Origin: Octopus bimaculoides
Lineage: Eukaryota
Reading direction: 5' to 3'
Assembly (NCBI RefSeq): GCF_001194135.2
Contig: NC_068981.1
Span: 166,955,549-167,019,548, forward strand
Length of the DNA: 64,000 nucleotides
Part shown: positions 128 to 64,000 of the stretch, one piece after another
How positions within the stretch are numbered: position 1 is the first letter of the stretch
How the letters are laid out: each line of letters opens with the position of its first letter
Made by a program: the position numbers and the translations under genes
Notes under the pieces: generated by a model
Told to the model about the DNA's origin: nothing
Databases searched by the model: none
What the model saw: the letters and a program-made list of their open reading frames with translations, nothing else

Positions 128-472
128 GTGCAACTATCATTAACACCACAACAGACAGGAGAACTACGAATTGTGGGTATTGCTTATAATCTAGGTACTA
201 ATTCTCTTCAGTCATCAAACAGTACCAACAGTTTGATATTAAATGATGGGAATTTAACTGGAACAACAGTGACAACATCGACATCTGCCACAACTCCTGG
301 TACTGGACCGACGCGTGCAAATTACAGTAATTCTATCAATGTACGTGGGAAACAGCGTTTAGAAGTTCAGGGGCCTAGACTTAACAGCAACAAAGAAGAA
401 AGAGCAAGTAAAGTTTACGGACCAGATCGCAGGCTCGATCTGGTAATAAAGCAACAAATGCCAATCCTTAAG
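128..472 (+). CDS. TRAPPC8: TRAPPC8 internal exon (first in window; gene continues upstream): VQLSLTPQQTGELRIVGIAYNLGT...VRGKQRLEVQGPRLN...YGPDRRLDLVIKQQMPILK
   Basis: Acceptor taatAG at 126-127, donor AG|GTAATC at 473, 345 nt, phase 0/0. Motifs GEL.I.G..YNLGT, VRGKQ.LE.QGPRLN and YGPDRRLD match my recollection of vertebrate TRAPPC8. Confidence 0.95.
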
Positions 473-1083
473 GTAATCTTTCTTTGCTAAACAGGGTTAA
501 ATATTCTTTCACATGAAAACACAAAAAATTATAGACTAATATCAATTTGAAAAATATATTAGGACATTTTAGCATGATTATTAGCCAATAAATTTTATAA
601 ATTTAATGTATTTCTGTAATCAAACATTGCAAAAATTTGTTTTAAACACCTCAATCATGTTTTAAACANNNNNNNNNNNNNNNNNNNNNNNNNNNNNNNN
701 NNNNNNNNNNNNNNNNNNNNNNNNNNNNNNNNNNNNNNNNNNNNNNNNNNNNNNNNNNNNNNNNNNNNNNNNNNNNNNNNNNNNNNNNNNNNNNNNNNNN
801 NNNNNNNNNNNNNNNNNNNNNNNNNNNNNNNNNNNNNNNNNNNNNNNNNNNNNNNNNNNNNNNNNNNNNNNNNNNNNNNNNNNNNNNNNNNNNNNNNNNN
901 NNNNNNNNNNNNNNNNNNNNNNNNNNNNNNNNNNNNNNNNNNNNNNNNNNNNNNNNNNNNNNNNNNNNNNNNNNNNNNNNNNNNNNNNNNNNNNNNNNNN
1001 NNNNNNNNNNNNNNNNNNNNNNNNNNNNNNNNNNNNNNNNNNNNNNNNNNNNNNNNNNCATATATATACATACATATATTTAT

Positions 1084-5486: not shown

Positions 5487-5695
5487 TTAAGTGTCTAAAT
5501 ATCTGAGATGAGTTGTCAATAAGATTGTAATCTCCCAGACTGTAGAAAAGCATTTTTAAAAAAAGTTTATATTTACACTTCAAATAGCTTGAACTTCCAA
5601 TTGTCATCAATTCTTATTCTTGGATATGTACATAGTGTCAGGTTGAATTCAAACTATGTGCATTTATTTCTAATGGTGTTGTGTATGTGTGTATG

Positions 5696-5698
<3 letters not shown>

Positions 5699-5771
<73 letters not shown>
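5699..5771. repeat. (CA)n microsatellite
   Basis: Direct reading. Confidence 0.98.
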
Positions 5772-5912
5772 ATTCAGTTTCTGTCTGCTAAATTCTACTC
5801 ATCAGGCTTAGGTCAGCCTGAGGCTATAGTTGAAGACACTTGCCCAAGTACCACACAGTGGGAGTGATTATAAAACTGTGTTTGGGAAGTAAACTTGTTA
5901 ACCACACAGCCA
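5772..5912 (-). mobile_element. SINE family C fragment
   Basis: Shares gaggctatagtagaagacacttgcccaag with copies at 8910-9285, 26745-27062, 35482-35620 and 61570-61685. Confidence 0.7.
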
Positions 5913-6727: not shown

Positions 6728-7040
6728 TATCATCATCATCATCGTTTAACGTCCGCTTTCCATGCTAGCATGGGTTGGACGATTTGACTGAGGACTGGTG
6801 AACCAGATGGCCACACCAGGCTCCAATCTGATTTGGCAGATTTTCTACAGCTGGATGCCCTTCCTAATGCCAACCACTGCGAGAGTGTAGTGGGTGCTTT
6901 TACGTGCCACCTGCACAGGAGCCAGTCCAGTGGCACTGGCAATGATCTCGCTTGAATGACTTTTCACATGCCACCGGCGCAAGTGTCAGGAACGCGACGC
7001 TGCGGCACAAGTGCCAAGAAGGCGACGCTGGTAACGATCA
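6728..7040 (-). mobile_element. SINE family A (RTE-tailed, (GAT)n end)
   Basis: gtggttggcattaggaagggcatccagctgtagaaa core, short internal tandem repeats and a gatgatgat tail. Many copies in the window. Confidence 0.8.
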
Positions 7041-9492: not shown

Positions 9493-9618
9493 AATACAAA
9501 ATGAAATACAAAATGAACTACAAAAGTGAAAACAGAACAACAGTTGAAATAGAATGTAAAACTCCAACTGTTGTTCTATCTTCACTTTTGTAGTTCATTT
9601 TGTATTTCGTTTTGTGTT
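9493..9618. repeat. Inverted repeat / hairpin, 54-bp arms (9493-9546, 9565-9618), 18-nt loop
   Basis: Arms align with 4 mismatches by eye. Confidence 0.9.
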
Positions 9619-10982: not shown

Positions 10983-11200
10983 CATCATCATCATTTAGCA
11001 TCTGCTTTCCATGCTTGCATGGGTTTGACTGAAGCTGGAAGGCTGCACCAGGTTCCGATCTGATTTGACATGATTTCTAAAGCTGGATGCCCTTCCTAAT
11101 GCCAACCACCCCCAGAGTGTAATAGGTGCTTTTTACATGCCACTGGTACAGGTTCCAGTCACGTGACACTGGCATCATCTATGGCTACAATTTCACTTGG
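10983..11200 (-). mobile_element. SINE family A
   Basis: catcatcatcattta...gctggatgcccttcctaatgccaaccac, same family as 6728-7040. Confidence 0.75.
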
Positions 11201-16596: not shown

Positions 16597-17690
16597 CAAA
16601 AGCTCAATATGTAATAGAAATTATCTAAAGCATAAAGAAAATCTTGTTTATTATAAACTTCACTTTAATTTTTTATATCCTCTATAGATAGTAACTCATA
16701 ACTAAACATGCGAACTAAGAATTGGAGCAGTGAGGGTTAAAAGAAAAAGTCACTTAAATGCCTATTAGCATTTTCTGTATTATAGACTAGAATTAGTTGC
16801 TGCTGTTGTTGTTGATAGCCTAAGTTAGCTGTGTTTAAGACATACAGCATAGAGATGGCTGATCTAATGTGGTAATAGTGTTGAATTTTGTCTGCTCATG
16901 GTTTTAACCATAGCCATCCTGTCTTTTTGGTGAGGATGTTGTCCTTAGCTTTGAGGATTTAAATTATATAGTACTCATTTGAAAGTCTAGGAAATATTGG
17001 CTGGTACACTAAGTGTGTAATTACATATAGATATTTTCTCATTGTAATTATTTAACATAGCATAAATGATGGCCTCTGGCATATCAAGAACAACTTTCAG
17101 TTGTTCTCAGTAATAAGATAGTTATATACATATATAATTATTTTATACACATGCACACATATACTACTATTACTGTTACTACTGCTAACTAATAACTAAG
17201 TGTAAAAGGGGGACTAAGGCTAATGGAGAAAATATATCTTTTATCTAATTCATCTGAATTATTTAAAAAAGAAAAATTAAAATAGACTTCTAATGTATAC
17301 ATACATAAGGTATGAAATGCTTGGAAATATTTTTACAATTTGAGAAGAAATAATTAACTGCCAAGACAATAGATTTTTAGCTTCAACTTTTTAATTTTTG
17401 TCTTAAATATATTTTATTCCTTGAAAAGTTTTTTATTCAAACAAAATCTAAACACTAAAAATGTTAATTCAGTAAGTTATGTTATTTCATTTTATTAATA
17501 TTTAATTTTTAATATAAATGGTAAATATTTTGAATTGTTACATTTACTTTGTTCATATTGTGTTTTGTACATAGATAACTTGTAATTTTCTTAGTTATAA
17601 AGATTTTCTCGGTAATAAGTCTAGATAAATGAAAATTGTTTCTCAAAATAAAAATAAAAAACACCTTCCAATTTTTACTATTATTTTTAG

Positions 17691-18027
17691 GCTGAGCAGT
17701 AGTGGTGACCAGGTTTATATCTCAGCAGAAACTACTTCATCTGGAATAGGGACACCTGCACCATGTGTTGGATTACCATCATATTTATCTTTGTACCAGC
17801 AAAGTCAGAGCAATGCTTTTGTATGGTGTGGTCATTCGCTGATTGATTTACATATAGGACCCCAGCACTCACAAACTGTTACCCTTACTGCATGCTTTTC
17901 CAAGCCTGGAGTCTATAATATTAATCAGCTCTCAGTATTTGTCACCTACACAACTGATTCCTCAGAGATGATCCTGCAGAAACAGAGTGCTCCCAGTCTT
18001 GTTGTTATAAGTGATATTTCTTCATGA
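17691..18027 (+). CDS. TRAPPC8: TRAPPC8 terminal coding exon: LSSSGDQ...AFVWCGHS...LTACFSKPGVYNINQLSV...APSLVVISDISS*
   Basis: tttttAG acceptor 17689-17690, stop TGA 18025-18027 followed by a second TGA. F.W.G and L.ACF...GVYN are TRAPPC8 C-terminal motifs. Confidence 0.95.
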
Positions 18028-25960: not shown

Positions 25961-26744
25961 CCTCCAGTAGGAAGAGCAGTACCTATGATTTTTCTCAGGG
26001 TCTTGGAGGGAGAGAAGTGGTGGTGGTGGGGAGCAAGAAAATAAGGAGTGATCTGGTTTGAATGCTTTCAACCGAGTAGGATCCTTAAAGGCACCCAAGG
26101 TGGTGGTGCTTTATGAAACAACATATTTCCTTTATCTCAGAAACATTTCACAAAGAGGAATATATCAGTTTGTAAAGAAGAGGAACCTACTTGCTAGGAC
26201 TTTTCTGAGTTATTTTCTCTCTCTCCCTCTCTTTTGCTCCTCCCCTTCAACAACCAAATATACCTATACTCATGTACACACACACACACACACGCACACT
26301 ACTTACATGAAATATTAGTTACACTTGCTCGAGACCTGATTTAGAAAAATACATTAACATCAGCTCACATTTCTACTTTACGTCACAACAACCTCCTTTC
26401 CTCTCTATGCCTGCCTGTGTGTGAGTGTCAGTCTGTGTGTGTGTTTGTGTGTACTGTTATGTGTTTCTTGCTGTGTGCGTGTATTTGTTTACTTTTCTTA
26501 CGTATGTATTTAAGTATGAATGTGTATAATTGCATGCTTCTTTCTTGTTATGCTTTGTGTATGTGTGTGTCTGTGCATGCAGGCTAGCTTGTGTATGTAT
26601 ATGCTTGTTTATCGGTTTTTGTGTATATTTGTACCTACTTTCATTTATATATGTATCAATGTATGTAAATTTTCGTATGGGGTGGGGCAGGGTATGTGGG
26701 ATAAATAATGCACACGGTCATCTACTCTATCAGAATTGAAACAA

Positions 26745-27062
26745 TAAAATCAAACCTTAAGCAAGTGTCTTCTATAGCCTCGGGCTGACCAAAGCCATGG
26801 GAGTGTATTTGGTAGATTGAAACTGAAAGAAGGCTGTCATATATGTATGTGTGTGTGTGTGTGTTTGTTTGTCCACACACCAATAGACAATTGTTGGTGT
26901 GTTTATATCCCCATAACCTAGTGCTTTGGCAAAAGAGTCCAATAGAACATGTACTAGATTTTCAAAAGAGGGACCTGGGATCGATTTGTTCAACTAAAAC
27001 CCTTCAAGGCAGTGCCCCCAAAATGGCTACAGTCAGAAAACTGAAACAAGTAAGATAAAAGA
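26745..27062 (+). mobile_element. SINE family C
   Basis: gcaagtgtcttctatagcctcgggctgaccaaagcc... internal (TG)n ... ggcagtgccccaaaatggctacagtc..actgaaacaagtaaga tail. Confidence 0.8.
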
Positions 27063-27094
27063 CATACCTAGATATACACACACACACACATACA

Positions 27095-27210
27095 ATCAAA
27101 ATAAAGGAAAGGATATCAAGTAATGATGCAGTATGATCATTTCAAGTGGCTCGTACTGCATAACTACTAGATATCCTGTTGCTTATTTTGATTTTATTCA
27201 CCTTACTTTG
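27095..27210. repeat. Short palindromic relative of the 35123-35390 hammerhead element (ribozyme core deleted)
   Basis: Same outer arm start (atcaaaataa) and same downstream tail (ttattttgatttta.tcacctta.tttga). Lacks CTGAAGA and helix II. Confidence 0.7.
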
Positions 27211-27491
27211 AGCTAAGCAGATAATACCGGACTGACTTGGAGTTTAAAACATCAGTACCGAATTCAAAAGAATCTCAATTACTTCATGTATATATATATA
27301 TACACATGCATATATGTATATATATATATATACACATGCAAATATATATATATATATGTACATATATATATATATACATATGTATATATATNNNNNNNNN
27401 NNNNNNNNNNNNNNNNNNNNNNNNNNNNNNNNNNNNNNNNNNNNNNNNNNNNNNNNNNNNNNNNNNNNNNNNNNNNNNNNNNNNNNNNNNN

Positions 27492-27624
27492 TTCACCAGA
27501 GAAGGAAAAACAATTGAGTGTTAAGACGAGCTCAGCTAGGCAGAGGAGTGTATTAGTGCTGGGTTCAGGTACAGAACTACGGTCTAAGAAGTGTTTAAGT
27601 GCTAGTAGACCGTCATTGTGAGGT
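27492..27624 (-). mobile_element. Penelope-like element RT, continuation beyond the piggyBac insertion
   Basis: Encodes PHNDGLLALKHFLDRSSVPEPSTNTLLCLAELVLTLNCFSFSGE, the PLE RT segment after motif A. Runs into N-gap 27392-27491. Confidence 0.85.
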
Positions 27625-27628
27625 TTAA

Positions 27629-28995
27629 CCCTTTCGTTGCTAACCCGGCTGTAGCTGGCCGAAAATTTTTTTGGTTCATAAGACTAACCCGGCCGTAGCC
27701 GGCCGAGCATACCCATTGTTATTTAAATGTATATTTGAACCCAAATTTCGTTAGTACATTCGTTCAAACACCTGATTTCACTTTGCAAACAGTTGAGTTA
27801 TTGTCTCTGACATTATTTGGCGTGATATTTGAACTCAGTGAATTTTGGAAGATTTTTTTCCACATTTTTTGCGGCGTTAATTTTTTTCAACTTTGAAGAT
27901 GGAGAGGAGTTTCATGCTATCAAGCAGTGATTCCGAATTTGAAGGTTTTTCAACAGAAGATATGGAGATATCGAAGAAAAGAATGAATGAGCTACAAAAG
28001 CACGTGGTGAACGATAATNNNNNNNNNNNNNNNNNNNNNNNNNNNNNNNNNNNNNNNNNNNNNNNNNNNNNNNNNNNNNNNNNNNNNNNNNNNNNNNNNN
28101 NNNNNNNNNNNNNNNNNNNNNNNNNNNNNNNNNNNNNNNNNNNNNNNNNNNNNNNNNNNNNNNNNNNNNNNNNNNNNNNNNNNNNNNNNNNNNNNNNNNN
28201 NNNNNNNNNNNNNNNNNNNNNNNNNNNNNNNNNNNNNNNNNNNNNNNNNNNNNNNNNNNNNNNNNNNNNNNNNNNNNNNNNNNNNNNNNNNNNNNNNNNN
28301 NNNNNNNNNNNNNNNNNNNNNNNNNNNNNNNNNNNNNNNNNNNNNNNNNNNNNNNNNNNNNNNNNNNNNNNNNNNNNNNNNNNNNNNNNNNNNNNNNNNN
28401 NNNNNNNNNNNNNNNNNNNNNNNNNNNNNNNNNNNNNNNNNNNNNNNNNNNNNNNNNNNNNNNNNNNNNNNNNNNNNNNNNNNNNNNNNNNNNNNNNNNN
28501 NNNNNNNNNNNNNNNNNNNNNNNNNNNNNNNNNNNNNNNNNNNNNNNNNNNNNNNNNNNNNNNNNNNNNNNNNNNNNNNNNNNNNNNNNNNNNNNNNNNN
28601 NNNNNNNNNNNNNNNNNNNNNNNNNNNNNNNNNNNNNNNNNNNNNNNNNNNNNNNNNNNNNNNNNNNNNNNNNNNNNNNNNNNNNNNNNNNNNNNNNNNN
28701 NNNNNNNNNNNNNNNNNNNNNNNNNNNNNNNNNNNNNNNNNNNNNNNNNNNNNNNNNNNNNNNNNNNNNNNNNNNNACCCCCCATCCAGTACGTGGAGAA
28801 CTTAGAGACAAAAATTATGCAATAGAATTGATTAAGAACCCTTTCTTTAATTATGTTCCAAATATCACATTAATATGTTGATAAATAAAAAAGTTACAGG
28901 TGTTTAATGAGACTAGTCTAAATTCATGATTATTTTAGAATTTAATTGAAACTCATGAGGGGTGTATTTTGGCCAGAAATATAGTAACGAAAGGG
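27629..28995 (+). mobile_element. piggyBac-family DNA transposon (central part hidden by N-gap 28019-28776)
   Basis: TTAA|CCCTTTCGTTGCTA left end and TAGTAACGAAAGGG|TGAA right end (13/14 inverted match). 22-bp subterminal direct repeats at 27641-27662 and 27685-27706. ORF from ATG 27899 has an acidic MLSSSDSEFEGFSTEDMEI N-terminus. Confidence 0.8.
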
Positions 28996-29945
28996 TGAAA
29001 AGGAGTTTGGATTCACCAGGTGGAAAAGAGAATGCGTTGAAGAGGTGTAGTGCATGGTTAGTGTCTTTTATATGTGAAGGTAGAGCAGAGATGAGAAGGG
29101 AATAAAAGTTTGTCGAGGCAGGAAGATAAAAGTTCTGTGGGGCAGTTGCAAGCAGAGACAATAGGGCAGCCGGGATTATCTTATTTATGTATTTTATGGA
29201 CGAAATAGATCATGGAAGTTCAGGGTGTGGTGACAATGAGGTTGGTGGCAGTGAACCAGAAGAGATCAGTTGATGTACAGTGGTTGAAACATTCCTCTTG
29301 TAATGGTTGGTAAGATCATTTGGTATCTTCATGTAGTATCTGGGGTCGTTGAGTTGGCGGAAGGCTTCTCTTCTGCAAAAGTCGGCTCACCAAACAACAA
29401 CAGGCCCTTTGTTGGCTGGCTTGATAATAATGTCTCTACATTGGCGGAGCTTCCGGAGGGCGTCTAGTTCCGATGGGAGAAGGTTCGAAATCCTTGGTTT
29501 TCTATCAAAATTGAAAGCACTGAGGTCAAAACGGCATTTATTAATGAATATATCTACCGAACGGTGTAACCTTGGGTTTGGTGTCCAGCTGGAGAGACAT
29601 TTTTTGAGTGTAGTAAAGTCATCCTCAGTTGGAGAAATTGGGCTTCTGTTGTAGAAAAATGCCCTGAATTGGATCTGACAGAGGAAACTTTCTGTATCGG
29701 CGCATGTGTCAAATTCATTGGATGTGTTTTTGAGAGGGATGAAATTAAAACCTCTGCTAAGTAAAGCTTGTTCGGAATGAGTGAGAGGTAAATCACTCAG
29801 GATGGTATAGACAGTGGGGGTGTTGAAGAGGCAGGAGAAGTGGCATGGTGGGGGATGAATGAGTGAATTTTGCATGTCTTTTGTGCAGTAAGGAAGTCGT
29901 ACAGTTTGCTATTGAGGTGGCGTGTCTGAAGTAGTATAACCTGAA
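28996..29945 (-). mobile_element. Penelope-like element (PLE) ORF remnant, N-terminal domain and RT start
   Basis: LSDLPLTHSEQALLSRGFNFIP...SNLLPSELDALRKLRQCRDIIIKPANKGPVVVW, then KIHK*DNPGCPIVSACNCPTELLSS and LPSHIKDTNHALHLFN..KLLF in shifted frames. These are diagnostic PLE RT motifs, with several stops and frameshifts. Confidence 0.9.
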
Positions 29946-29949
29946 GTTG

Positions 29950-29963
29950 TATGTGTGCGTGTG

Positions 29964-30002
<39 letters not shown>

Positions 30003-30051
30003 ATGTATATATATGTGTGTATGTATGTATATGCATATCTATCTATCTATC

Positions 30052-30084
<33 letters not shown>

Positions 30085-30160
30085 GTATGTATTATGTATA
30101 TATATGTGTGTGTATGTATGTATATGCATGTCTATCTATCTATATATATATATATTTTAT
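29950..30160. repeat. Compound (TA)n/(TG)n/(TCTA)n microsatellite
   Basis: Direct reading. Confidence 0.95.
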
Positions 30161-30314
30161 ATGTATTTATTTTCTCTGAGTTAATAATTAACTCGGACAA
30201 AATAAATTGGTTAATAGATACCAGGGTAGCAAAGATCACAAAATGACTGTGGTGTAACTCCTGTTTATTAGGTAGAAACTCCTTGTTATTTTGGGTACTT
30301 GAGTAAATATATAT

Positions 30315-30562
30315 ATTTAGTAAATGGAGTAAAACACATATGTTAAATGAATTCTTTTATTTCCAACATATGTTTCGAAGATTACAAATTATACCTTCCA
30401 TAGGAATAGGTGATGTTGATAAGGATGTAATCTTCTCTTCAGGAGATTACATCCTTATCAACATCACCTATTCCTATGGAAGGTATAATTTGTAATCTTC
30501 GAAACATATGTTGGAAATAAAAGAATTCATTTAACATACGTGTTTTACTCCATTTACTAAAT
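30315..30562. repeat. Near-perfect inverted repeat: 119-bp arms (30315-30433, 30444-30562), 10-nt loop; PLE pseudo-LTR with inverted partial copy
   Basis: 1 mismatch (30338/30539). Lies upstream of the PLE ORF on its strand. Confidence 0.95.
30360..30443 (-). ncRNA. Type-I hammerhead ribozyme motif in the PLE pLTR
   Basis: Minus strand: CTGAAGA (30442-30436), GAAGATTAC...GTAATCTTC (9-bp helix II, 59 nt in total), GAAAC (30376-30372), ATAT, GTT, then GGAAATAAA. The helix I 5' strand is cut off by the inversion junction. Confidence 0.75.
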
Positions 30563-30599
30563 TTATATATATATGTATGTATGTACTTTAATTTAATCT

Positions 30600-31925
30600 A
30601 GTTTCAGCTCATGAGATGTGGCCATGCTGGGGCACCGCCATTTGGTGCTGTTACATAATTTTACTTCACTAATTCTTTTTAGAAATTGACGTTTGGTGCA
30701 TGAGGGAGTTTGATGCTGCTGCCCTCATTTGCACTTCCTGCTGTGAAGGTGGTCCATCTGGGACACTTGACAGTAAGAGATCTAGCTTCGTTTCAAAGAC
30801 AATTACATCCCCCCCATGGAGGTCTCTCTGGTCATTTGGGAGGATATTGAAGAGCTGTGGGCCTTTAAAGTCCAGGCTGTTACAATATCTTGTCCTATAT
30901 CTTGTCTCAAAATTTGTGACAAGTTACTCTAGGATCTTCCAGGTGTATATTATGGCATATCTTTCCCACCTAAGCTCTAAGGAATAGAGTCTCAATCTCT
31001 TGAGTCTTTCCCAGTTGCGTATATGTTTTATAGAGGCTGTCTTCATCATGCAGCTTCATTGGATTGCCTCAAGTTCTTCAGTTTTCTTGGAAGTTTTCCA
31101 GTTGCAAGGAAGCTCTGAAAGAGGGACTGCAGTGGTCTTGCTAGGACTCGCTTACATACTTTTAGAAGGATTGCTGGGAATCCATCAGTGCCAGTAGCTG
31201 AGTTTGGGTTCATTTCATCTATAGCCCTTATCATATCATCTTCCTTTATATTGATGTAATCAATTATCACTGCCTCTATTTTTATATCTGCAGTGGTGAA
31301 AAAGTCAGTTGGATTGCTGATTTGCAAGTGCTCTATGGGTGGAATGACAACACTTTTGAATTACTCATTTAGTATTTCACTAATCCTCTTTGGGTTTCTT
31401 GTGAGTGTACCATATTTTTTGAGGAATGGCCTTACCTTGCACTGAGGCGGTTTCTTTGGTAAATTTTTAGAAGGCTCTGGGGTTAGAGTTTATATTGTCT
31501 ATAGCCCAGGCTTCTTTGCCTGCTCTTTCTTTTTCATGGGAGAGTTGCAAATTTTTTCAGTCTCCAGCAGTTGTGTTTTCAGGCAGGATTTTTCACTACT
31601 TTTAGTTTGTTTGTTTAGGTGATTTGAAATTTTTGTTCTTGTGTACAGTGGCCTTTCTCTCTGGGACACATTTGTAGCATATGGCTTGCATTACAGACAT
31701 GAATTGTTGAAGTTTCATGTCGATGTCCAGTGAGGAGAGACATTTAGGCTAATTTTGTTTGAGAATCTCTTTCTCAATTTGTTTTCAGTTTGCCTTATGG
31801 AAGTTCAAACTGGAAAGATTCTGGGAGTTTCTTGTAGGCTGCATGTCCATGGTTTTCTTTGGTCTGTACATGGTCAGCTCTACCATGTTGTGATCTGATG
31901 AGAGGGCAGTCTTTCTGCTAGCACC
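30600..31925 (-). mobile_element. CR1/L2-like LINE, 5'-truncated and internally deleted (RT core missing)
   Basis: SDHNMVEL (end of the APE endonuclease), then PNSATGTDGFPAILLKVCKRVLARPLQSLFQSFLATGKLPRKL, fused at about 31075 to LEAIQ...WERLKRLRLYSLE.RWERYAIIYTWKILE...RAAASNSLMHQ. 3' tail ggcggtgccccagcatggccacatc. Confidence 0.85.
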
Positions 31926-32250
31926 TTGATAATATTTTCACATTTGATTCCCAATTGTAATAATTTTTATATTTTACGCCTAATTATTTCTTTGTATAAT
32001 AATGTTCACTTCTTAGTATATACTGCTATCATTATTTTATCACAGTCATAATCTCTCTCTTTTAAGCAAACATCACGGTAGTCCAACAACAGAGGGGAGG
32101 CAATTTATCAAGTTTTACCTTCCCCTCAAAGCAACATAGAGATTACAATTTAGCAGCTCATCTGTAAGTTTTGCAGTGTATGTGTGTGAGAGGGAGTGGT
32201 GGAGAAATAACGTTGCAAACAATGAATAAAATAAACATAAAATTATAATA

Positions 32251-32868
32251 GTGGAAGGAATCCTGGGTAGAGGGAGACCCAGGAAGACATGGGATGAGGT
32301 GGTGAAGCATGACTGTCGAATGTTGGGCCTCACAGAGGCTATGACAAAAGACCGAGACCGAGGGAGGTATGCTGTGACTGAGAAGACCCAGCAAATATAG
32401 TGAGTCCACAGCTGTAACCTACACCAATGTCGTATAACCAACCCACCTTGGATCGTAAGACGACATGTCATGCTTGAGGAGACCTATTGAGTCAAATACA
32501 TCAACAGCAATATCAAAATGAAATCAAATGGAAATTGTAGTTGTGACCGCCGTGCTGGTAGCACGTAAAAAGCACCATCTGAACATGGCTGATGCCAGTG
32601 CCGCTTTGACTGGCTTCCGTGCCAGTGGCATGTAAAAAGCACCATCCAATCATGGTTGATGCCAGCTCCTCTGGCCTCTGTGCCATTGGCATGTAAAAAG
32701 CACCCACTACACTCTCGGAGTGGTTGGTAATAGGAAGGACATCCAGCTGTAGAAACACTGCCAGATCAGATTGGGGCCTGGTGCAGCCTCCTAGCTTCCC
32801 AGACCCCAGTCGAACCATCCAACCCATGTCAGCATGGAAAACAGACGTTAAATGATGATGATGATGAT
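32251..32868 (+). mobile_element. RTE-clade LINE 3' end whose 3' UTR is the SINE family A body
   Basis: 32251-32400 encodes VEGILGRGRPRKTWDEVVKHDCRMLGLTEAMTKDRDRGRYAV* (GRPRKTW motif). Continues into the family A core and (GAT)n tail. Confidence 0.8.
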
Positions 32869-32898
32869 GAATATCCCAACTGTTGAAAATTTGTATCT

Positions 32899-32984
32899 TG
32901 CAACTGAAGAAGGCGCTGTATTTAAAATTGATGTAATACTTCCTTGTTCGATTAAATGGAGCTGCCTGAAACAGCCGTATTGCA
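32899..32984 (+). ncRNA. Complete type-I hammerhead ribozyme (Penelope-associated type)
   Basis: Helix I TGCAA (32899-32903)/TTGCA (32980-32984). CTGAAGA 32904-32910. Helix II AGGC/GCCT plus extension, 57 nt. GAAA 32968-32971. Helix III AC/GT with AGCC loop. GTA cleavage triplet 32977-32979. Confidence 0.85.
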
Positions 32985-33017
32985 TTAATACCTCCTTGAC
33001 ATTCTTGTTACTTGCTT

Positions 33018-33118
33018 TATATATATATATATATATGTATATATATACACACACACACACGCGTGCACACACACACACACACACACATATACATATATAT
33101 ATGTACACATATATATAT

Positions 33119-33158
<40 letters not shown>
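33018..33158. repeat. (TA)n/(CA)n microsatellite running into N-gap 33159-33552
   Basis: Direct reading. Confidence 0.95.
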
Positions 33159-33866
33159 NNNNNNNNNNNNNNNNNNNNNNNNNNNNNNNNNNNNNNNNNN
33201 NNNNNNNNNNNNNNNNNNNNNNNNNNNNNNNNNNNNNNNNNNNNNNNNNNNNNNNNNNNNNNNNNNNNNNNNNNNNNNNNNNNNNNNNNNNNNNNNNNNN
33301 NNNNNNNNNNNNNNNNNNNNNNNNNNNNNNNNNNNNNNNNNNNNNNNNNNNNNNNNNNNNNNNNNNNNNNNNNNNNNNNNNNNNNNNNNNNNNNNNNNNN
33401 NNNNNNNNNNNNNNNNNNNNNNNNNNNNNNNNNNNNNNNNNNNNNNNNNNNNNNNNNNNNNNNNNNNNNNNNNNNNNNNNNNNNNNNNNNNNNNNNNNNN
33501 NNNNNNNNNNNNNNNNNNNNNNNNNNNNNNNNNNNNNNNNNNNNNNNNNNNNATCTGGTAAAGTACAGAGCAAGAAAATTTTTACTTAAAATATAGCAAC
33601 TAAAGATAAAATTTCAAATAAAATATTTAGATTTAGAAAATATTAGCTTTTGTTAAAACTAAAAATTTTATTACAAGTTATTACTTGTATTTGTTATTAT
33701 TTGTTGCTTCTATTAAAAATAAAAGGTATCTCAATTAAATTATTTTTGGGACTTTAAAAAAATTAATTTTTCTAATTATTAATTAATAATTAGAAATTTG
33801 AAAATAGGTTATAAAAAATAATAGTAATACATAATTATGAGGTCATCAAGTATGAAATTTGTAGAA

Positions 33867-34235
33867 TTAGGTACTGCAATAGCCTAGGGTTCAGAGGACC
33901 ACAGCTCTCCAAAACAATTGAGAAACTTACACGATATACAGGTGGAAGTTTTTAAAAAGAAACTGGACACTCTCCTACCCACAATACCAGATGAACCAAT
34001 GGCTCAACATGAGGCACAGTTGAGGGCAGCAGAGTCAAATTCCCTCATACACTAGATGGGCCATCAACAGTTTTGATGGGATCACATCAGTCGGAGAAGA
34101 GGAACCATGGAAGGATTGTAGAGAGGATACAAATATAGAGAGTGAAAAAATCATGGTAGCACTCCAGCATGAACACAGTCACCTGGCTGAAAAACATAAA
34201 GGAATAAAAGAAAAAGCATAAAAGAATATGTATAA
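33867..34235 (+). mobile_element. 5'-truncated CR1/L2-like LINE 3' end with 19-bp TSD
   Basis: RYCNSLGFRGPQL...KKKLDTLLPTIPDEP...RAAESNSLIH, same family as 30600-31925. TSD AAGTATGAAATTTGTAGAA at 33848-33866 and 34236-34254. Confidence 0.85.
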
Positions 34236-34257
34236 AAGTATGAAATTTGTAGAAAAG

Positions 34258-35105
34258 AAAAAGTTTGCTGTTTTATAGATACAAGAAATAGTTTAATTCA
34301 TCAAAGAATGCATCCATACTTTTGCCATTTCAGCGGTAGCTTGTCCAGCCTGAAACTATAAAAGCCTGGCAATCTAGAGTCAATAAAATTTTGGAAGGCC
34401 TGTTTTACAGCATCGTTGGAATTAAATTTTTTTTCCAATCAAAAAATTATCCAAATTCTGGAAGATGTGGTAGTCAGTGGGGACAAGATCAGGTGAGTTT
34501 GGTGGATGATGGAGAACTTCCAACTCCAACTTCTGTAGTTTCACCAATGTCATTTTTGCAATGTGTGGTCTGGTGTTGCCTTGCAGTAAAATAGGAATGG
34601 ATTTGTTGACTAATCTAGGCTATTTTTTTGTAAGTTTCTGCATTATTTGGTCCAGTTGGCTGTAGTATACTTCAGCTATGATTGATGAGCCAGATTTAAT
34701 GAAATCATAGTGGATCACACCTGCACCAGACCACCAAACACATACCATCAGCTTCTTTTGATGAATTTTGCTTTTTGGACTGTGTTTTGGTGGCTCAGCT
34801 TTGTCCCGCCATTGTGCTGAACGTTTACATTTCTTGTATTGGATCCATTTCTCATCACATGTTACAATTCGATTAAAAGATGATTCATTTTTGTGATGAG
34901 AAAGTAGCATAATGCAGGTTTCCAAACGTTACTGTTTCCGATTTTCATTGAGTCCATGTGGAACCCACTTATCCAACTTTTTCACTCTACCAATTTGAAC
35001 TAGGTGAGTCAATATTGTTTGCTGGCTAACACCAAACAACGATGATAATTCATGGACACTTTGAGATAGATCTGACTTGATGGTGGCTTTCAGCTTGTCA
35101 TTATC
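34258..35105 (-). mobile_element. mariner transposase remnant (5'-truncated)
   Basis: KKLDKWVPH, RIVTCDEKW, KKLMVCVWW and HPPNSPDLVPTDYH motifs, with stops and frameshifts. Confidence 0.9.
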
Positions 35106-35122
35106 CACCTATACATATATAT

Positions 35123-35376
35123 ATCAAAATAAACAACAAAGATATCCAGAGGTAATGCAGTGCGATCGTTTCACGTGACTCCATTTAATTGAACAATGTA
35201 AACATTACATCAAATATAAAATGTAGAGCAAAATTTCTAAATTTCTACGTCTTTGTGCAGCTGAAGATTGCTCTACATTTTATATTTGATTTAATGTTTA
35301 CATTATTCAATTAAATGGAGTTGCATGAAACGATCGTACTGCATTACCTCTGGATATCATTGTTGCTTATTTTGAT
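35123..35376. repeat. Inverted repeat: 109-bp arms (35123-35231, 35268-35376), 36-nt loop
   Basis: 8 mismatches by eye. Confidence 0.93.
35256..35343 (+). ncRNA. Type-I hammerhead ribozyme motif, same family as 32899-32984
   Basis: Helix I TGCAG (35256-35260)/CTGCA (35339-35343). CTGAAGA 35261-35267. 59-nt helix II with a T-T mismatch at its base. GAAAC 35327-35331, palindromic GATC loop, GTA 35336-35338. Confidence 0.8.
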
Positions 35377-35481
35377 TTTAATCACCTTATTTTGAAACTG
35401 TATGTATAATACCATACTAAATTCTGGTGCCTAAACTTAAGTACCATATTCACCTGATTCTATATATATATGTATATACAA

Positions 35482-35620
35482 TGGGCTTCTTTCAGTTTCT
35501 GTCTTCCTAATCCACTCACAAGGCTTTTGTTGGCCTGAGGCTATTGTAGAAACCACTTCCCCAAGGTGCCACACAGTAGTACTGAACTCAGAACCATGTG
35601 GTTGGGAAGCAAGCTTCTTT
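35482..35620 (-). mobile_element. SINE family C fragment
   Basis: Homologous to 26745-26830. Confidence 0.7.
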
Positions 35621-35819
35621 ATTTCATAAAATTGGCTATAAAAGCCTTACACAGATGGGAAAAACAAGGACAGACAAACATAGAGGATGAAGAAGTTGCT
35701 TTACCATGAATGAAAATGTTGCGGATGATAATATAAAAATGTCATGTGGTTAAAAATTATTTTTTTAAAATTTCAAATTTAAGCAGTTGATAATCATTTT
35801 TAATTGCAAATTTTGCAAT

Positions 35820-36935
35820 GTATACAATCGAAAGAAAGGCATCCAACTGCCAGGTTCGAACCCTTACTTTTCCCTCTGGCCCCACTTACCTGGTTCCAGT
35901 CACACGCAGCAAGTTCACTACTGGCTTCCATCTTTTCGTGAACATATCCTGTGACAGGTATCTCTTCTCCAACCTGATCTTACTATCGAGGTGGTAACTA
36001 AAAAAGTTAACCAGCCCTTGACTGGAGACAAAGATACCAGTTACTATCCCTCTTACTCACATCTTCCATACTGTTTCTTTCAGTATGGCTACTACGCAGA
36101 AAAAATCCTTCCTTTCACTGTTAAGGGAAGGAGGTGGCACAATCTTGATAATAGACTCAGCTGATAGCTGTACCCGTCCCGTCACTGACAACAGTTTTTC
36201 GACAAAAGCTATCAGCCTTGATAATTCCGGAAACTCCATGAAGGCATGCAAGACAGTTTCTCTGTCCCACCCGCACCTCGGGCATGTTGGCGAGACGGAA
36301 CTTCTGTGCCTTGACAGATTGTCTTGAACACACAAAGTCGAACAGGAGCACTGCTAAGCCAGGGATTTCTGGTAATTATCCAGACATCCTAGCCTGAAAG
36401 TTCTCCTGAGCAGGTTGATCAACTGATTTCCATCGCAGCCCAGGGCTACCCCCAAAACATCATCTGACATAAATTCCAATAACCCCTATATTAATCCGCA
36501 GTAGAACTCCTGTTGCCAGTATTACCCACCTGAGAGAGTAGCTGGAGTGCTTGACGACACTCCAATTGCCAATACCCCAGCCTAGGTCTTCGTTTGATCC
36601 ATGGACCAATGTCCCTTAAGGATGTCAACTGTGGAAAATAGAACCTTACATGTAGTGACCACAGCTGCTCCCCATCCAGGTAAAGCCAGAGGTGCCTCAA
36701 CCTCAACGCGAATTTTCGCATCTTCAGCCAAAGCATTCCTAGCCCACCCTTTAGCCAAGGAAAGGTAACTACCTTGGTATGGATATGTGATATAAATGAA
36801 TAGTGTATCTGAAGTCTGTGAAGGATAACTGTCACAGAAGACACTGGAAGAAGTTTCTAGATTTTGGGCCTTACAAGTCAGATTGCATTCCAATTTAACA
36901 TCACCAAATGGTCCTTGTATCCATTTGGGGGAGTT
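35820..36935 (-). mobile_element. L1/Tx1-clade LINE ORF2 3' part (zf-RVT region), 5'-truncated
   Basis: PWLKGGLGMLWLKMRKFALRLRHLW and CPRCGWDRETVLHAF (CCHC-type zf-RVT). Stops and a frameshift are present. Confidence 0.85.
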
Positions 36936-37964: not shown

Positions 37965-38240
37965 ACCAAGGTGCTACATAAAAGCATTGATGTAGGTGAG
38001 TGCTGGTGCCATGTAAAAAGCATTGGTGCTAGTTCCACATAAAAAGCACTGGTGATAGTGCCACATAAAAGGCATCCAGTAACTCTGTGGAGTAGTTGAC
38101 GTTAGGAAGGTCATCCAGCTGTAGAAACTAAGCCAAAACAGACTATAGCCTGGTGCAACTTGTGACCTTACCAGTTCCTGTCAAACCATCCAATCCATGC
38201 CAGCATGGATAATGGACATTAAATGATGATGATGATGACA
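37965..38240 (+). mobile_element. SINE family A
   Basis: Internal ggtgc.acataaaaagcac repeats, family A core and (GAT)n tail. Confidence 0.75.
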
Positions 38241-42194: not shown

Positions 42195-42456
42195 TGACCC
42201 TGTCAGTGCCAGTGCCATATAAAAAGTACTGGTACAGGTGCCACACAAAAGGCACTAGTGCTGGTGCCATGTAAAAAGCACCCAGTATACTCTGTAAAGT
42301 GGTTGGTGTTAGGAAAGGTATCCAGCTGTAGAAACCATGACAAAACAGACAATGGAGCCTAGTATGGCCCTTAGCCTTACCAGCTCCTATCAAACTGTCC
42401 AACCTATGCTAGCATGGAAAATGGACATTAAATGATGATGGTGATGATGATGATGA
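42195..42456 (+). mobile_element. SINE family A
   Basis: Family A core and (GAT)n tail. Confidence 0.75.
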
Positions 42457-43398: not shown

Positions 43399-43785
43399 CT
43401 GCACTATATTCAGAATCACTTAAGTATACACTTGTATTCATGTATACAGCTGTACAGATTATCTCTCCTGGTACCTACAATGCTTACTTCTGGCCTTGCA
43501 TAATAACTACCTTTTAATGTATACTTTTTGTGTGTTCATTAAAAACCACATTAGTGTTCTCACATTCATTGACTACCATTTTCTGCTGACATATTCTATA
43601 GAAAATGGTAGTTAATGAATGTGAGAACACTAATGTAGTTTTTAATGAGCACACAAAAAGTATACATTAAAAGGTAGTTATTATGCAAGGCCAGAAGCAA
43701 GCATTGTAGGTACCAGGAGAGATAATCTGTACAGCTGTATACATGAATACAAGTGTATACTTAAGTGATTCTGAATATAGTGCAG
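43399..43785. repeat. Long inverted repeat: 186-bp arms (43399-43584, 43600-43785), 15-nt loop
   Basis: 4 mismatches, all transitions. Confidence 0.95.
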
Positions 43786-60339: not shown

Positions 60340-60800
60340 AGTGGTTGATGTTAAGAAGGATATACTGCTGTAGAAACCATGCCAAAGCAGACATTGGGAC
60401 TTGATGCAGTCCTCAGGCTCGTCTATTCATGTTGAACTGCTTGACCCATTAGACTGCAGCCATTTGGGGCAATTCTTTGAAGAACTTTAGGCAAATAAGT
60501 TGACCACCAGTACTTATTCTTTAAAGCCTGGTACTTGTTCTATCAGTTTCTTTTGCTGAACCACTAAGTTATAGGTATGTAATCACACTAACACTGGTTG
60601 TCAAGTGGTGGTGGGGGACAGATTTATATATTATATCATCTAATGTCCATCTTGGATGGTTTGACAGGAGCTGGTAAGCCAGAGAACTATGCGAAGCTCC
60701 CCTGTCTGCTTTGGCATGGTTTTACAGCTGGATACCCTACCTAATACCAACCACTGTACAGAGTGGACTTGGTGCTTTTCACATGGCACCGATGAGGTGC
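60340..60800. mobile_element. Nested SINE fragments (A +, C -, A -)
   Basis: Family cores recognisable in both orientations. Confidence 0.55.
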
Positions 60801-60819
60801 CATGTGAAAAGTAATTTGC

Positions 60820-63109: not shown

Positions 63110-64000
63110 TCTAATTTTAATATGTATTTCATAAATCTTAGCTCCCACACTGGCATCGATCAATGAGATTATTTATGTCTCATGGATAAAAACTTATTGG
63201 CTTTGATGCTAAGAAATCTTTGAAAGCTGATTCCACCTCTGGTTTGGACCTAAAAGTTTTATCACTTAAAAACGTATTTAAATGCTTAAAAAACTGGTAG
63301 TCAGTGGGTGAAAGATCAGGAGAATATAGAGGATGTGGTAAAGTCTTGTATCCCAAGTCTGTGAGTTTCTGCAGTGTCATTCTTGCAACATGTGACTTTG
63401 CATTATCGTGGGGCAGAATTGGGCCATGCTGATTCACCATTACAGGTTTTATTTTTTAAAAGTGAGCATGCATTTCAGCTAATTGCAATAAAACTCTGCT
63501 GTAATGGACAACACCAATTGCTGTAATGGACAACACCAGACAGTTCCCATAATCTTTTGCTAATGCAACTTTGGCTTTGGGAAATGTTCAGGGGGACTCA
63601 TCAATCAACCTATTGAAATGATTGTTTATGGTTATCATAAAGGATCCACTTTTCATCGCAAGTGACTATTCGGTCAAGAATAGGATCATTGGTGTTTTGC
63701 AGAAAGAGCATCAAGCACACTTCAAAACATGGAACTTTATTTTCATTGAGCTCATGTGATACCCATTTATCAAGCTTTTTCATCTTACCAATCTTCTGCA
63801 GATTGCGTGAGACCGTTGCAATACCGATACCAAGTACCTGAGACATTTCTCCGACACTTTGACGTGGGTTTTGTTCAATAATTGCTTTCAATTGTTCATT
63901 GTCAAGACTGCATGACCGTCCTCTACCATCTTTATCGTCAAGGCTCTCATCACCACTTTGAAATTCCTGAAACCACCTTCGTACTGTGCAATCACTTGTG
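63110..64000 (-). mobile_element. mariner transposase remnant, runs off the window end; 20-bp tandem duplication at 63497-63538
   Basis: KKLDKWVSHEL, DRIVTCDEKWILYDN, HDNAKSH and HPLYSPDLSPTDY motifs. Confidence 0.92.

What the first reader, a model, noticed from the sequence alone, without database searches (positions are those of the whole stretch)
27095..35390. A family of ORF-less, microsatellite-flanked hammerhead units (retrozyme-like) clustered with Penelope remnants, with covarying helices
Seen in the sequence: the hammerheads at 32899-32984 and 35256-35343 are diverged members of one family, sharing attaaatggag.tgc.tGAAAC and gta.tgcatta..acctc. Their differences preserve pairing. 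The helix I closing pair is A-U in one copy (TGCAA/TTGCA) and G-C in the other (TGCAG/CTGCA). The second helix II pair is G-C versus U-A (AGGC/GCCT versus TTGC/GCAT). Neither unit has an adjacent ORF and both abut (TA)n runs. A third relative with the core deleted lies at 27095. An unrelated hammerhead at about 30400 has a helix II of similar size (59 nt versus 57 and 59). Established: Penelope-like elements carry minimal type-I hammerheads with a 2-bp helix III and a palindromic loop that cleave as dimers, and non-autonomous hammerhead retroelements (retrozymes) exist. Inference: this is a non-autonomous, PLE-mobilised ribozyme family with an unusually long helix II that may favour simple repeats. 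I do not know of a description of it in cephalopods but cannot search.
Basis: partly seen in the sequence, partly recalled or inferred. Interest (0 to 1): 0.85.

Follow-up and report, generated by a model that had tools for sequence, protein, structure and literature searches.

The report
Penelope-type hammerhead stubs in TA repeats
Four short, gene-less DNA insertions sitting in TA-repeat tracts carry real hammerhead-ribozyme motifs and look like leftover tail ends of Penelope-like jumping genes, a known kind of genomic debris whose only unusual feature is an extra-long ribozyme arm.

Summary
The hammerhead (HHR) motifs are real. 32899-32984(+) and 35255-35344(+) are two about 74%-identical copies of one family. 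27090-27285 is a core-deleted relative. 30363-30444(-) is an unrelated motif. A structural descriptor finds them and nothing else convincing in 64 kb (shuffles: 0.01 per window, and 0 of 300 for the I1 type). No Rfam hammerhead model reports them, even at E<=10.

The units show three signatures of Penelope-like-element (PLE) integration: 3' ends on (TA/CA)n tracts, an inverted truncated partner, and two alternative 3' termini differing by an optional tail of about 90 nt. Helix III is a dimer-type 8-nt palindrome.

Best reading: PLE-made insertions of a 3'-terminal hammerhead-plus-trailer module, now dead relics. They are not retrozymes in the strict sense, because there are no tandem copies.

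The two compensatory pairs are confirmed, but with two sequences they carry no statistical weight. Only one PLE remnant is present; the other neighbours are LINE, SINE, mariner and piggyBac-like elements.

The 57-59-nt helix II differs from the 12-15 nt in six PLE hammerheads sampled from related loci. Genome-wide copies could not be reached. No unit spans an assembly gap.

The parts
35123..35467 (+). I2 composite. Inverted 5'-truncated copy (35123-35231), 36-nt centre holding the helix I 5' strand and CUGAAG (35232-35267), sense copy (35268-35376), and an optional tail of about 90 nt (35377-35467). Flanked by (TA)n at 35110-35123 and 35461-35480.
35255..35344 (+). Hammerhead motif of I2: GUGCAG/CUGCAU helix I, CUGAAGA, 59-nt helix II (U.U at 10.1/11.1), GAAAC-GAUC-GUA (ACGAUCGU is an 8-nt palindrome). 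Predicted cleavage after A35338.
32875..33015 (+). U32899 unit: leader, hammerhead and a trailer of about 30 nt ending ...TTGTTACTTGCTTT directly on (TA)n/(CA)n 33018-33157. No inverted partner on its 5' side. The 5' limit is uncertain, because a SINE with a (GAT)n tail lies immediately upstream.
32899..32984 (+). Hammerhead motif of U32899: UGCAA/UUGCA helix I, CUGAAGA, 57-nt helix II (A-U at 10.1/11.1), GAAAC-AGCC-GUA. Predicted cleavage after A32979.
27090..27285 (+). I11: I2-family composite lacking the centre (no CUGANGA). Arms 27090-27136 and 27151-27197, then the shared tail 27198-27285. Flanked by (CA)n 27072-27093 and (TA)n 27285-27391.
30304..30573 (.). I1 foldback, unrelated in sequence to I2: 133-nt arms, 97% complementary, 4-nt centre, TA-rich flanks.
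30363..30444 (-). Hammerhead motif of I1: CUGAAGA at the foldback apex, G10.1-C11.1 plus a 10-bp helix II around a 39-nt loop (59 nt in total), GAAAC-AUAU-GUU (ACAUAUGU palindrome), helix I of only 2 bp, then a trailer of about 50 nt to (TA)n.
28996..29940 (-). PLE remnant, 5' part (N-terminal DUF8422-type region with the ...KPANKG... motif, early RT). Degenerate, with stops and frameshifts.
27492..27628 (-). Continuation of the same PLE RT after the piggyBac-like insertion. Runs into gap 27392-27491. No endonuclease or 3' end anywhere in the window.
29959..30154 (.). (TA)n/(TG)n tract between the PLE 5' end and I1. Similar tracts lie at 27285-27391 and 33018-33157. These are the apparent insertion targets.

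Best explanation
The four units are products of Penelope-like-element (PLE) retrotransposition into (TA)n/(CA)n microsatellites. Each is the 3'-terminal module of a PLE-type RNA: a type-I hammerhead followed by a 30-50-nt trailer.

Proposed mechanism:
1. A PLE GIY-YIG endonuclease nicks the microsatellite.
2. The PLE reverse transcriptase starts at one of two internal sites near the RNA 3' end. This gives copies that end either at ...TTATTTTGAT or about 90 nt further on (the 'tail').
3. It copies through the hammerhead.
4. Synthesis aborts or switches template just upstream, leaving a severely 5'-truncated copy, usually joined head-to-head to a second, inverted truncated copy. That join makes the foldback.

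The hammerhead is of the PLE minimal/dimeric kind. It has a complete CUGANGA/GAAA core, an open helix I, and a 2-bp helix III plus tetraloop that together form an 8-nt palindrome able to pair between two ribozymes. Its helix II is expanded to a 57-59-nt imperfect hairpin. Any ribozyme role belongs to the RNA of active source elements. The copies here are dead relics, and in the composites the hammerhead fold cannot compete with the foldback.

Shown: motifs, family relations, foldbacks, shared termini and tail, microsatellite association, absence of ORFs and of tandem copies.

Inferred: the PLE machinery as the agent, the order of events at integration, and catalytic competence.

I lean towards truncated by-products of autonomous or longer PLEs rather than a dedicated short family, but this window cannot decide that.
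For: - Motif reality: descriptor hits versus shuffles. Core 13/13 conserved between copies that are 61% identical at positions outside the core and stems. Helix II segments fold closed on their own (z -2.0, -2.9, -3.8).
- PLE-type helix III palindromes ACGAUCGU, ACAUAUGU and ACAGCCGU, as in PLE hammerheads of related loci (ACAGCUGU and ACGU) and as described in PMC4209133.
- Shared unit terminus in U32899 and in both inverted arms, with a shared tail only on the sense arms of I2 and I11. An optional tail arising from two RT start sites is described as unique to PLEs (PMC11167929).
- (TA)n association: 4.3% background, all four 3' ends. (TA)n is a known preferred PLE target, and an adjacent inverted 5'-truncated copy is a known PLE feature (PMC8557442).
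- Reference case L002: a PLE ORF (YRDDG, CxxC, GIY-YIG-like), then about 100 nt, hammerhead, 40-nt trailer and (TA)n, with an inverted partner of about 270 nt carrying an extra 65-nt tail at one end only.
- A PLE is present in the window and its family occurs in other read sets. PLEs are abundant in octopus genomes (PMC13282606, PMC8967140).
Against: - No sequence link to any autonomous PLE was obtained. The window's own PLE lacks its 3' end, and its relatives carry compact min-hammerheads (helix II 12-15 nt, no loop III), so it is probably not the parent.
- No Rfam hammerhead model reports the motifs.
- 10.1/11.1 is U.U or A-U in the I2 family, and helix I of I1 is 2 bp, so catalytic competence is doubtful.
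- The tail is about 90 nt, against the 30-40 bp described.
- I2 and I11 share the whole composite layout, which could mean the foldback was inherited from a dedicated master element rather than made at each insertion.
- Foldbacks without any hammerhead also occur in the window (43399-43785).
- Only 3+1 copies were available.
Confidence: 0.62

Rival explanations
1. A dedicated non-autonomous, PLE-parasitic ribozyme element. A short master RNA consists of little more than the long-helix-II hammerhead, trailer and tail, and is perhaps itself a hairpin. It is transcribed, possibly self-cleaved or circularised, and copied by PLE RT in trans.
For: - All copies lack ORFs.
- I2 and I11 share the same composite layout, including the tail.
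- There are three family copies within 8.3 kb.
- Two unrelated families share the same odd helix II size of 57-59 nt.
- Non-autonomous PLE derivatives sharing only the 3' end with autonomous elements are known (PMC8557442), and animal retrozymes are argued to derive from PLE pLTRs (bioRxiv 10.64898/2026.07.22.740005).
- An active axolotl retrozyme hammerhead has a U.U at the base of helix II and a 2-bp helix III with tetraloop (PMC7229834).
Against: - No tandem head-to-tail copies exist. TRF finds only microsatellites and a SINE-internal 67-nt repeat.
- There is only one complete hammerhead per locus, so no monomer can be excised.
- The foldback outcompetes the hammerhead fold, -150.9 versus -63.5 kcal/mol.
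- The apparent common 5' limit of U32899 and I2 only reflects where I2's sense copy stops.
- Solitary truncated PLE hammerheads are the commonly reported state (PMC4209133).
Confidence: 0.2
2. Foldback MITEs or other DNA-transposon derivatives that insert at TA, in which the hammerhead-like strings are fortuitous or irrelevant.
For: - I1 is a near-perfect 270-bp palindrome in TA-rich flanks.
- A comparable foldback without any hammerhead lies at 43399-43785.
- Mariner and piggyBac-like elements are present nearby.
- Rfam reported no hammerhead family.
Against: - In I2 and I11, conserved element sequence (the tail) continues about 90 nt beyond the right arm, so the inverted repeat is not terminal.
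- U32899 is a single arm ending at the same terminus.
- Two unrelated families each carry a complete core, a palindromic helix III and a closing helix II, at frequencies of 0.01 or less per window in shuffles.
- The core is more conserved than the rest.
Confidence: 0.1
3. Chance motifs, or hairpin loci of another kind (small-RNA/miRNA-like hairpins, microsatellite-driven palindromes).
For: - Sub-threshold Rfam hits to miRNA hairpin families over I1 and the microsatellites.
- The sequence is AT-rich and repeat-rich.
- My descriptors were tuned after seeing the hits.
Against: - The miRNA hits are far below gathering score (69.6 versus 142 bits) and occur on both strands, as expected for any long hairpin.
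- Shuffle controls.
- Family conservation pattern.
- Matching PLE insertion signatures.
Confidence: 0.05

Closest known systems
Minimal/dimeric hammerheads of Penelope-like elements (Cervera & de la Pena 2014, PMC4209133)
   Same: Type-I topology, full CUGANGA/GAAA core, very short helix III whose 15.2-16.2 pair and loop form a palindrome, and no loop-loop tertiary motifs. Mostly found as solitary motifs, or as pairs on opposite strands 100-700 bp apart, and interpreted as truncated PLEs.
   Different: Helix II is a 57-59-nt hairpin instead of 6-8 bp with a small loop (12-15 nt in six PLE hammerheads sampled here). 10.1/11.1 is not G-C in the I2 family. No Rfam hammerhead model reports them.
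PLE insertion architecture: (TA)n targets, adjacent inverted 5'-truncated copy, optional 'tail' (Craig et al. 2021, PMC8557442; PMC11167929)
   Same: All three signatures are present. The L002 PLE shows the same layout.
   Different: No ORF and no pLTR-ORF-pLTR unit. The inverted partners abut with only 4-36 nt between them. The tail is about 90 nt rather than 30-40 bp. The parent PLE is not identified.
Animal non-LTR retrozymes (Cervera & de la Pena 2020, PMC7229834; bioRxiv 10.64898/2026.07.22.740005)
   Same: ORF-less, AT-rich, type-I hammerhead, strongly self-paired sequence, proposed dependence on PLEs. The axolotl HHR_Amex2 likewise has U.U at the base of helix II and a 2-bp helix III with tetraloop.
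   Different: Retrozymes are defined by 150-450-bp head-to-tail tandem repeats, each with a hammerhead, giving circular RNAs. Here there are no tandem copies and only one complete hammerhead per locus.
'HHR_half_core' cases in Naiad PLE 3'-UTRs (Craig et al. 2021, Methods)
   Same: The CUGANGA and GAAA halves lie far apart (35-50 nt) near the 3' end of PLEs that prefer (TA)n.
   Different: Those did not fit any stem/loop descriptor. Here helices I, II and III can all be drawn and helix II closes on its own.
Foldback/palindromic MITEs
   Same: Short, ORF-less, long inverted arms, TA-rich flanks.
   Different: The inverted repeat is not terminal in I2 and I11. A single-arm copy (U32899) shares the same terminus. 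The arms carry a conserved ribozyme core.

Membership tests
Hammerhead ribozyme, type I | Conserved core C3-U4-G5-A6-N7-G8-A9 ... G12-A13-A14, A15.1-U16.1, H17 | tested here: met
   Present in 32899-32984(+), 35255-35344(+) and 30363-30444(-). Deleted in 27090-27197.
Hammerhead ribozyme, type I | Three helices closing on the core (I, II, III) | tested here: inconclusive
   I2 and U32899 have helix I of 5-6 bp, a proximal helix II of 3-4 bp plus a distal hairpin, and a helix III of 2 bp. I1 has a 10-bp helix II but a helix I of only 2 bp.
Hammerhead ribozyme, type I | G10.1-C11.1 pair at the base of helix II | tested here: not met
   U.U in I2 and A-U in U32899. Met only in I1. U.U has a precedent in axolotl HHR_Amex2 (PMC7229834).
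Hammerhead ribozyme, type I | Match to a curated Rfam hammerhead model | tested here: not met
   No match of any family at gathering score, and no hammerhead family among the 62 matches at E<=10 over 26500-36000.
Hammerhead ribozyme, type I | Site-specific self-cleavage | not testable with these tools
   Needs in vitro transcription of monomer and dimer constructs.
PLE minimal/dimeric hammerhead | Very short helix III with palindromic 15.2-16.2 and loop 3, allowing dimer formation | tested here: met
   ACGAUCGU (I2) and ACAUAUGU (I1) are perfect 8-nt palindromes. ACAGCCGU (U32899) has 6 of 8 positions palindromic.
PLE minimal/dimeric hammerhead | Compact helix II (about 6-8 bp, small loop) | tested here: not met
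   57, 59 and 59 nt here, against 12-15 nt in six hammerheads of PLE loci L002, L026 and L027.
PLE minimal/dimeric hammerhead | Located in the pLTR or 3' end of a PLE with RT and GIY-YIG | not testable with these tools
   No cephalopod full-length PLE could be fetched. The only PLE in the window lacks its 3' end.
PLE-mediated insertion | Insertion into (TA)n or related microsatellites | tested here: met
   All four 3' ends, and 6 of 8 ends, lie within 10 nt of a tract. Background is 4.3%.
PLE-mediated insertion | Adjacent inverted 5'-truncated copy | tested here: met
   I2, I11 and I1. Not U32899.
PLE-mediated insertion | Optional tail: two alternative 3' termini | tested here: met
   Three copies end at ...TTATTTTGAT, and two continue through a shared tail of about 90 nt. 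The L002 PLE shows the same with a 65-nt tail.
Non-LTR retrozyme | Head-to-tail tandem repeats of 150-450 bp, each with a hammerhead | tested here: not met
   TRF and the direct-repeat search find only microsatellites, a 67-nt SINE-internal repeat and dispersed copies 2.4-8.2 kb apart.
Non-LTR retrozyme | Expression as small circular RNAs | not testable with these tools
   No transcriptome data available.
MITE (TIR DNA transposon derivative) | Inverted repeats at both element termini, flanked by a target-site duplication | tested here: not met
   For I2 and I11 the conserved sequence extends about 90 nt beyond the right arm. For I1 the test is inconclusive, because TA-rich flanks hide any TA duplication.

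The most novel reading that the evidence does not exclude
There may be a distinct class of PLE-dependent mini-elements in cephalopods made of little more than an extended-helix-II hammerhead plus an RT-recognition trailer and tail. They would integrate as hairpin (head-to-head) dimers into (TA)n. On this reading, the convergent 57-59-nt helix II in two unrelated families is functional, for example as a binding platform for the PLE protein or as a switch between the ribozyme fold and the foldback.
Probability: 0.18. Interest if true: 0.6.

Novelty: new member of a known kind. Interest (0 to 1): 0.35.

Why it matters
If the reading is right, this locus is a compact, readable example of how Penelope-like elements litter a cephalopod genome with ribozyme-bearing stubs. 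It shows all three PLE integration signatures at single-copy resolution.

It also shows that standard tools can miss a class of PLE hammerheads with a long helix II: Rfam's hammerhead models did not report these three. Counts of genomic hammerheads, and annotation of PLE ends in octopus repeat libraries, may therefore be incomplete.

The long perfect hairpins would form double-stranded RNA if transcribed. It is not a new kind of system.

Tried and rejected
- Rfam at gathering and at E<=10 reported no hammerhead. The only sub-threshold hits were miRNA families over hairpins and microsatellites, on both strands, and I rejected them as artefacts.
- An exact-pattern scan of metagenome contigs with TAAATGGAGNTGCNTGAAAC gave 23 hits. 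None had flanking homology or an upstream CUGANGA, so they are chance matches.
- Exact-protein look-ups of window ORFs, meant to find other assemblies of the locus, found nothing.
- A protein search with spurious ORFs translated across the units, meant to reach repeat copies in read assemblies, gave no hits.
- A host-gene (TRAPPC8-like) search for cephalopod orthologous loci returned only relatives of about 42% identity, so there was no presence/absence test and no gap closure.
- The resemblance between the I1 trailer and the L002 PLE trailer is marginal (shuffle p=0.045), so I did not use it.
- RNAalifold on the two copies recovered helix I but not helix II. Two sequences are too few.
- The idea that U32899 and I2 share a fixed 5' end was dropped, because the alignment limit only reflects where I2's sense copy stops.
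- Relaxed-descriptor hits at 5655-5805(-) and 60789-60816(+) were judged to be chance.

Full report
**What is there**

The region 27.0-35.5 kb is a mosaic of transposable-element debris. Four short ORF-less units stand out within it. Three belong to one family:
- I2 at 35123-35467.
- U32899 at about 32875-33015.
- I11 at 27090-27285.

U32899 (32899-33013) is 73.5% identical to I2 (35256-35368). I11 (27151-27211) is 87% identical to I2 (35334-35395).

The fourth unit, I1 at 30304-30573, is unrelated in sequence. An exhaustive search with a covariance model built from the I2/U32899 pair scores it at only 10.7 bits. That search also finds no further family members anywhere in the 64 kb.

**Assembly gaps**

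None of the units spans a gap.
- **Gap 28019-28776** lies inside a piggyBac-like insertion (about 27629-28995). The insertion has TTAA at 27625-27628 and terminal inverted repeats CCCTTTCGTT… and …AACGAAAGGG. The PLE fragments on either side of it lie about 30 nt apart, in the same order and orientation, in an independent 80%-identical copy from a public read assembly (L001). The scaffold is therefore consistent across this gap.
- **Gap 27392-27491** separates a (TA)n tract from a PLE cut in mid-RT. Continuity cannot be verified, and the PLE 3' half is missing.
- **Gap 33159-33552** begins 145 nt after U32899, within its microsatellite. What follows that tract is unknown.

**Are the hammerheads real?**

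Rfam reported no match at gathering score for the whole window. No hammerhead family is among the 62 matches at E≤10 for 26500-36000.

A structural descriptor does find them. It requires helix I, CUGANGA, helix II with an insert of up to 90 nt, GAAA, a 2-3-bp helix III with a 4-6-nt loop, and H17.
- It hits exactly 32904-32979 and 35261-35338 on both strands of the window. Dinucleotide shuffles give 0.01 hits per window.
- On the minus strand of I1 there is CUGAAGA, then G10.1-C11.1 opening a perfect 10-bp helix II, then GAAAC-AUAU-GUU. Its helix I is only 2 bp. Nothing of this type appears in 300 shuffles, even when helix I is not required.

The descriptors were tuned after seeing the hits, and shuffling removes natural hairpin richness, so these figures are generous.

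Independent support comes from the conservation pattern between the two diverged copies. Identity is 13/13 at core positions, 34/42 in stems and 22/36 elsewhere (Fisher p≈0.01).

Each helix II segment folds on its own into a closed, elongated hairpin more stable than shuffles (z = -2.0, -2.9 and -3.8).

I2, I1 and I11 are foldbacks, with arms of 109, 133 and 47 nt that are 93, 97 and 81% complementary.

In I2 and I1 the CUGAAGA box sits in the short asymmetric centre, and the arms begin at the first base of helix II. Only one arm therefore carries a complete ribozyme.

A multiple alignment of all arms shows a defined unit terminus, …TTGTTGCTTATTTTGAT. U32899 and both inverted arms stop there, directly on (TA)n or (TG)n. 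The sense arms of I2 and I11 continue through a shared tail of about 90 nt before reaching (TA)n.

All four 3' ends, and six of eight ends overall, lie within 10 nt of a (TA/CA/TG)≥6 tract. That holds for only 4.3% of the window.

**Comparison with PLE biology**

Each of these features is documented for Penelope-like elements:
- Preference for (TA)n.
- Heavy 5' truncation.
- An adjacent inverted 5'-truncated copy.
- An optional extension at one end only (PMC8557442).

The optional tail has been traced to two alternative internal start sites of the PLE reverse transcriptase. [quoted passage not shown]

Cervera & de la Peña (PMC4209133) reported that most PLE hammerheads occur as solitary motifs, or as pairs on opposite strands, and interpreted them as truncated PLEs. 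They also noted that positions 15.2-16.2 and loop 3 are palindromic, which favours dimeric ribozymes. Here helix III plus its loop reads ACGAUCGU (I2), ACAUAUGU (I1) and ACAGCCGU (U32899).

A reference case fetched here (L002) shows the same layout. A PLE ORF with YRDDG, a CxxC linker and a GIY-YIG-like C-terminus (no Pfam hit) is followed by about 100 nt, a hammerhead, a 40-nt trailer and (TA)n. On the other side sits an inverted partner truncated to about 270 nt, carrying an extra 65-nt tail before its own (TA)n.

**Context**

tblastn with full-length PLE proteins finds a single PLE in the window, on the minus strand. It covers 29815→28985 and 27629→27492, which is only the N-terminal region and early RT, with no endonuclease or 3' end.

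Its relatives with complete C-termini carry compact min-hammerheads just downstream of the ORF or on inverted partners. Their helix II is 12-15 nt and helix III is ACGU without a loop (L002, L026, L027). This PLE is therefore probably not the parent of the units.

The other neighbours are not Penelope:
- 30620-31900(-) is an internally deleted LINE. No PLE similarity was found, and LINE-type motifs are visible by eye.
- 33860-34060(+) is a LINE 3' end.
- 34290-35110(-) is a mariner remnant (Pfam Transposase_1).
- 32540-32870 is a SINE-like element with a (GAT)n tail.

**Retrozyme or not**

Animal retrozymes are defined by head-to-tail tandem repeats of 150-450 bp, each with a type-I hammerhead, which yield circular RNAs (PMC7229834).

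TRF and a direct-repeat search find only microsatellites, a 67-nt SINE-internal repeat and the dispersed copies. Each locus has one complete hammerhead.

If the whole I2 composite is transcribed, the foldback (-150.9 kcal/mol) excludes any structure containing the hammerhead helices (-63.5 kcal/mol). For the isolated motifs the hammerhead fold lies only 3-5 kcal/mol above the minimum free energy.

The strict retrozyme reading is therefore not supported. A dedicated short non-autonomous PLE parasite remains possible. I2 and I11 share the whole composite layout, and non-autonomous PLE derivatives sharing only the 3' end with autonomous elements are known (PMC8557442).

**MITE or chance**

A foldback with 186-nt arms at 43399-43785 has no hammerhead core and no (TA)n flanks. 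Foldbacks alone are therefore not diagnostic.

In I2 and I11, however, the inverted repeat is not terminal, because conserved sequence continues about 90 nt beyond it. U32899 is a single arm with the same terminus. Two unrelated families also carry a full core, a palindromic helix III and a closing helix II. A DNA-transposon or chance origin is unlikely, though it is not excluded for I1.

**What is unusual**

Helix II is 57, 59 and 59 nt in two unrelated families, against 12-15 nt in the six PLE hammerheads I sampled.

Craig et al. noted "HHR_half_core" cases, with core halves 35-50 nt apart, in Naiad 3'-UTRs that fitted no stem/loop descriptor (PMC8557442). Widely spaced cores near PLE ends have therefore been seen before.

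Octopus repeat papers list abundant PLEs but do not mention hammerheads (PMC13282606, PMC8967140; a search for "hammerhead ribozyme" with "octopus" found no description).

**Limits**

I could not reach cephalopod genome data. The protein collection lacks the orthologue of the host gene, exact look-ups failed, and the metagenome hits were chance.

The decisive tests remain undone: the genome-wide 5'-end distribution, R-scape covariation, and a match to a catalogued PLE terminus.

**Verdict**

The "retrozyme-like non-autonomous family with covarying helices" part is not demonstrated. I file this as a new member of a known kind (dispersed PLE hammerhead stubs) with an atypically long helix II. 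Interest is moderate to low.

Noticed in passing
window 27625-28999: A piggyBac-like element is inserted at TTAA inside the PLE reverse-transcriptase region (terminal inverted repeats CCCTTTCGTTGCTAAC... and ...GTAACGAAAGGG). It contains gap 28019-28776 and an N-terminal ORF fragment (MKMERSFMLSSSDSEFEGF...).
   Followed up: partly
window 43399-43785: A near-perfect foldback (186-nt arms, 98% complementary, 15-nt centre) with termini CTGCACTATATTCAG.... It has no hammerhead core and no (TA)n flanks, and is probably a MITE-like element of a different class.
   Followed up: partly
window 9493-9618: A smaller foldback (54-nt arms, 93% complementary, 18-nt centre) in A-rich sequence. No hammerhead core.
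   Followed up: no
window 128-490, 2091-2471, 17629-18027 (+): Exon-like ORFs of a host gene. Their distant homologues (about 42% identity) carry Pfam PF24542, PF24544, PF24545 and PF24546, which I take to be TRAPPC8-type domains (from memory, not checked). No close orthologue is in the protein collection.
   Followed up: partly
window 32540-32870; also 6729-6978, 10983-11151, 38066-38238, 42265-42450, 60652-60788: A SINE-like repeat with 2.4 internal 67-nt subrepeats and a (GAT)6 tail, present in at least six copies in the window (73-79% identity).
   Followed up: partly
window 30620-31900 (-) and 33860-34060 (+): An internally deleted LINE (RT N-terminal motif ...SATGTDGFPAILLK... joined to the ORF2 C-terminus ...AAASNSLMHQ) and a second LINE 3' end. 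The first abuts the TA-rich tract next to I1. Neither is Penelope.
   Followed up: partly
window 34290-35110 (-) and 63244-63792: Mariner transposase remnants (Pfam Transposase_1, E=1.6e-23 for 34620-34925). The first ends on the (TA)n that holds I2.
   Followed up: partly
window 5655-5805 (-) and 60789-60816 (+): Weak hits of a very relaxed hammerhead descriptor. The first spans a (TG)n tract as a 128-nt 'helix II'. The second has a CCGAUGA core and a 1-bp helix III. Both are probably chance.
   Followed up: no
L002 12561-12588 (+) and 9015-9042 (-): The PLE closest to the window's remnant (P0007 type) carries, on both inverted copies, a min-hammerhead-like motif with a variant core CCGACGA (C instead of U4) and GAAACGUC.
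   Followed up: no
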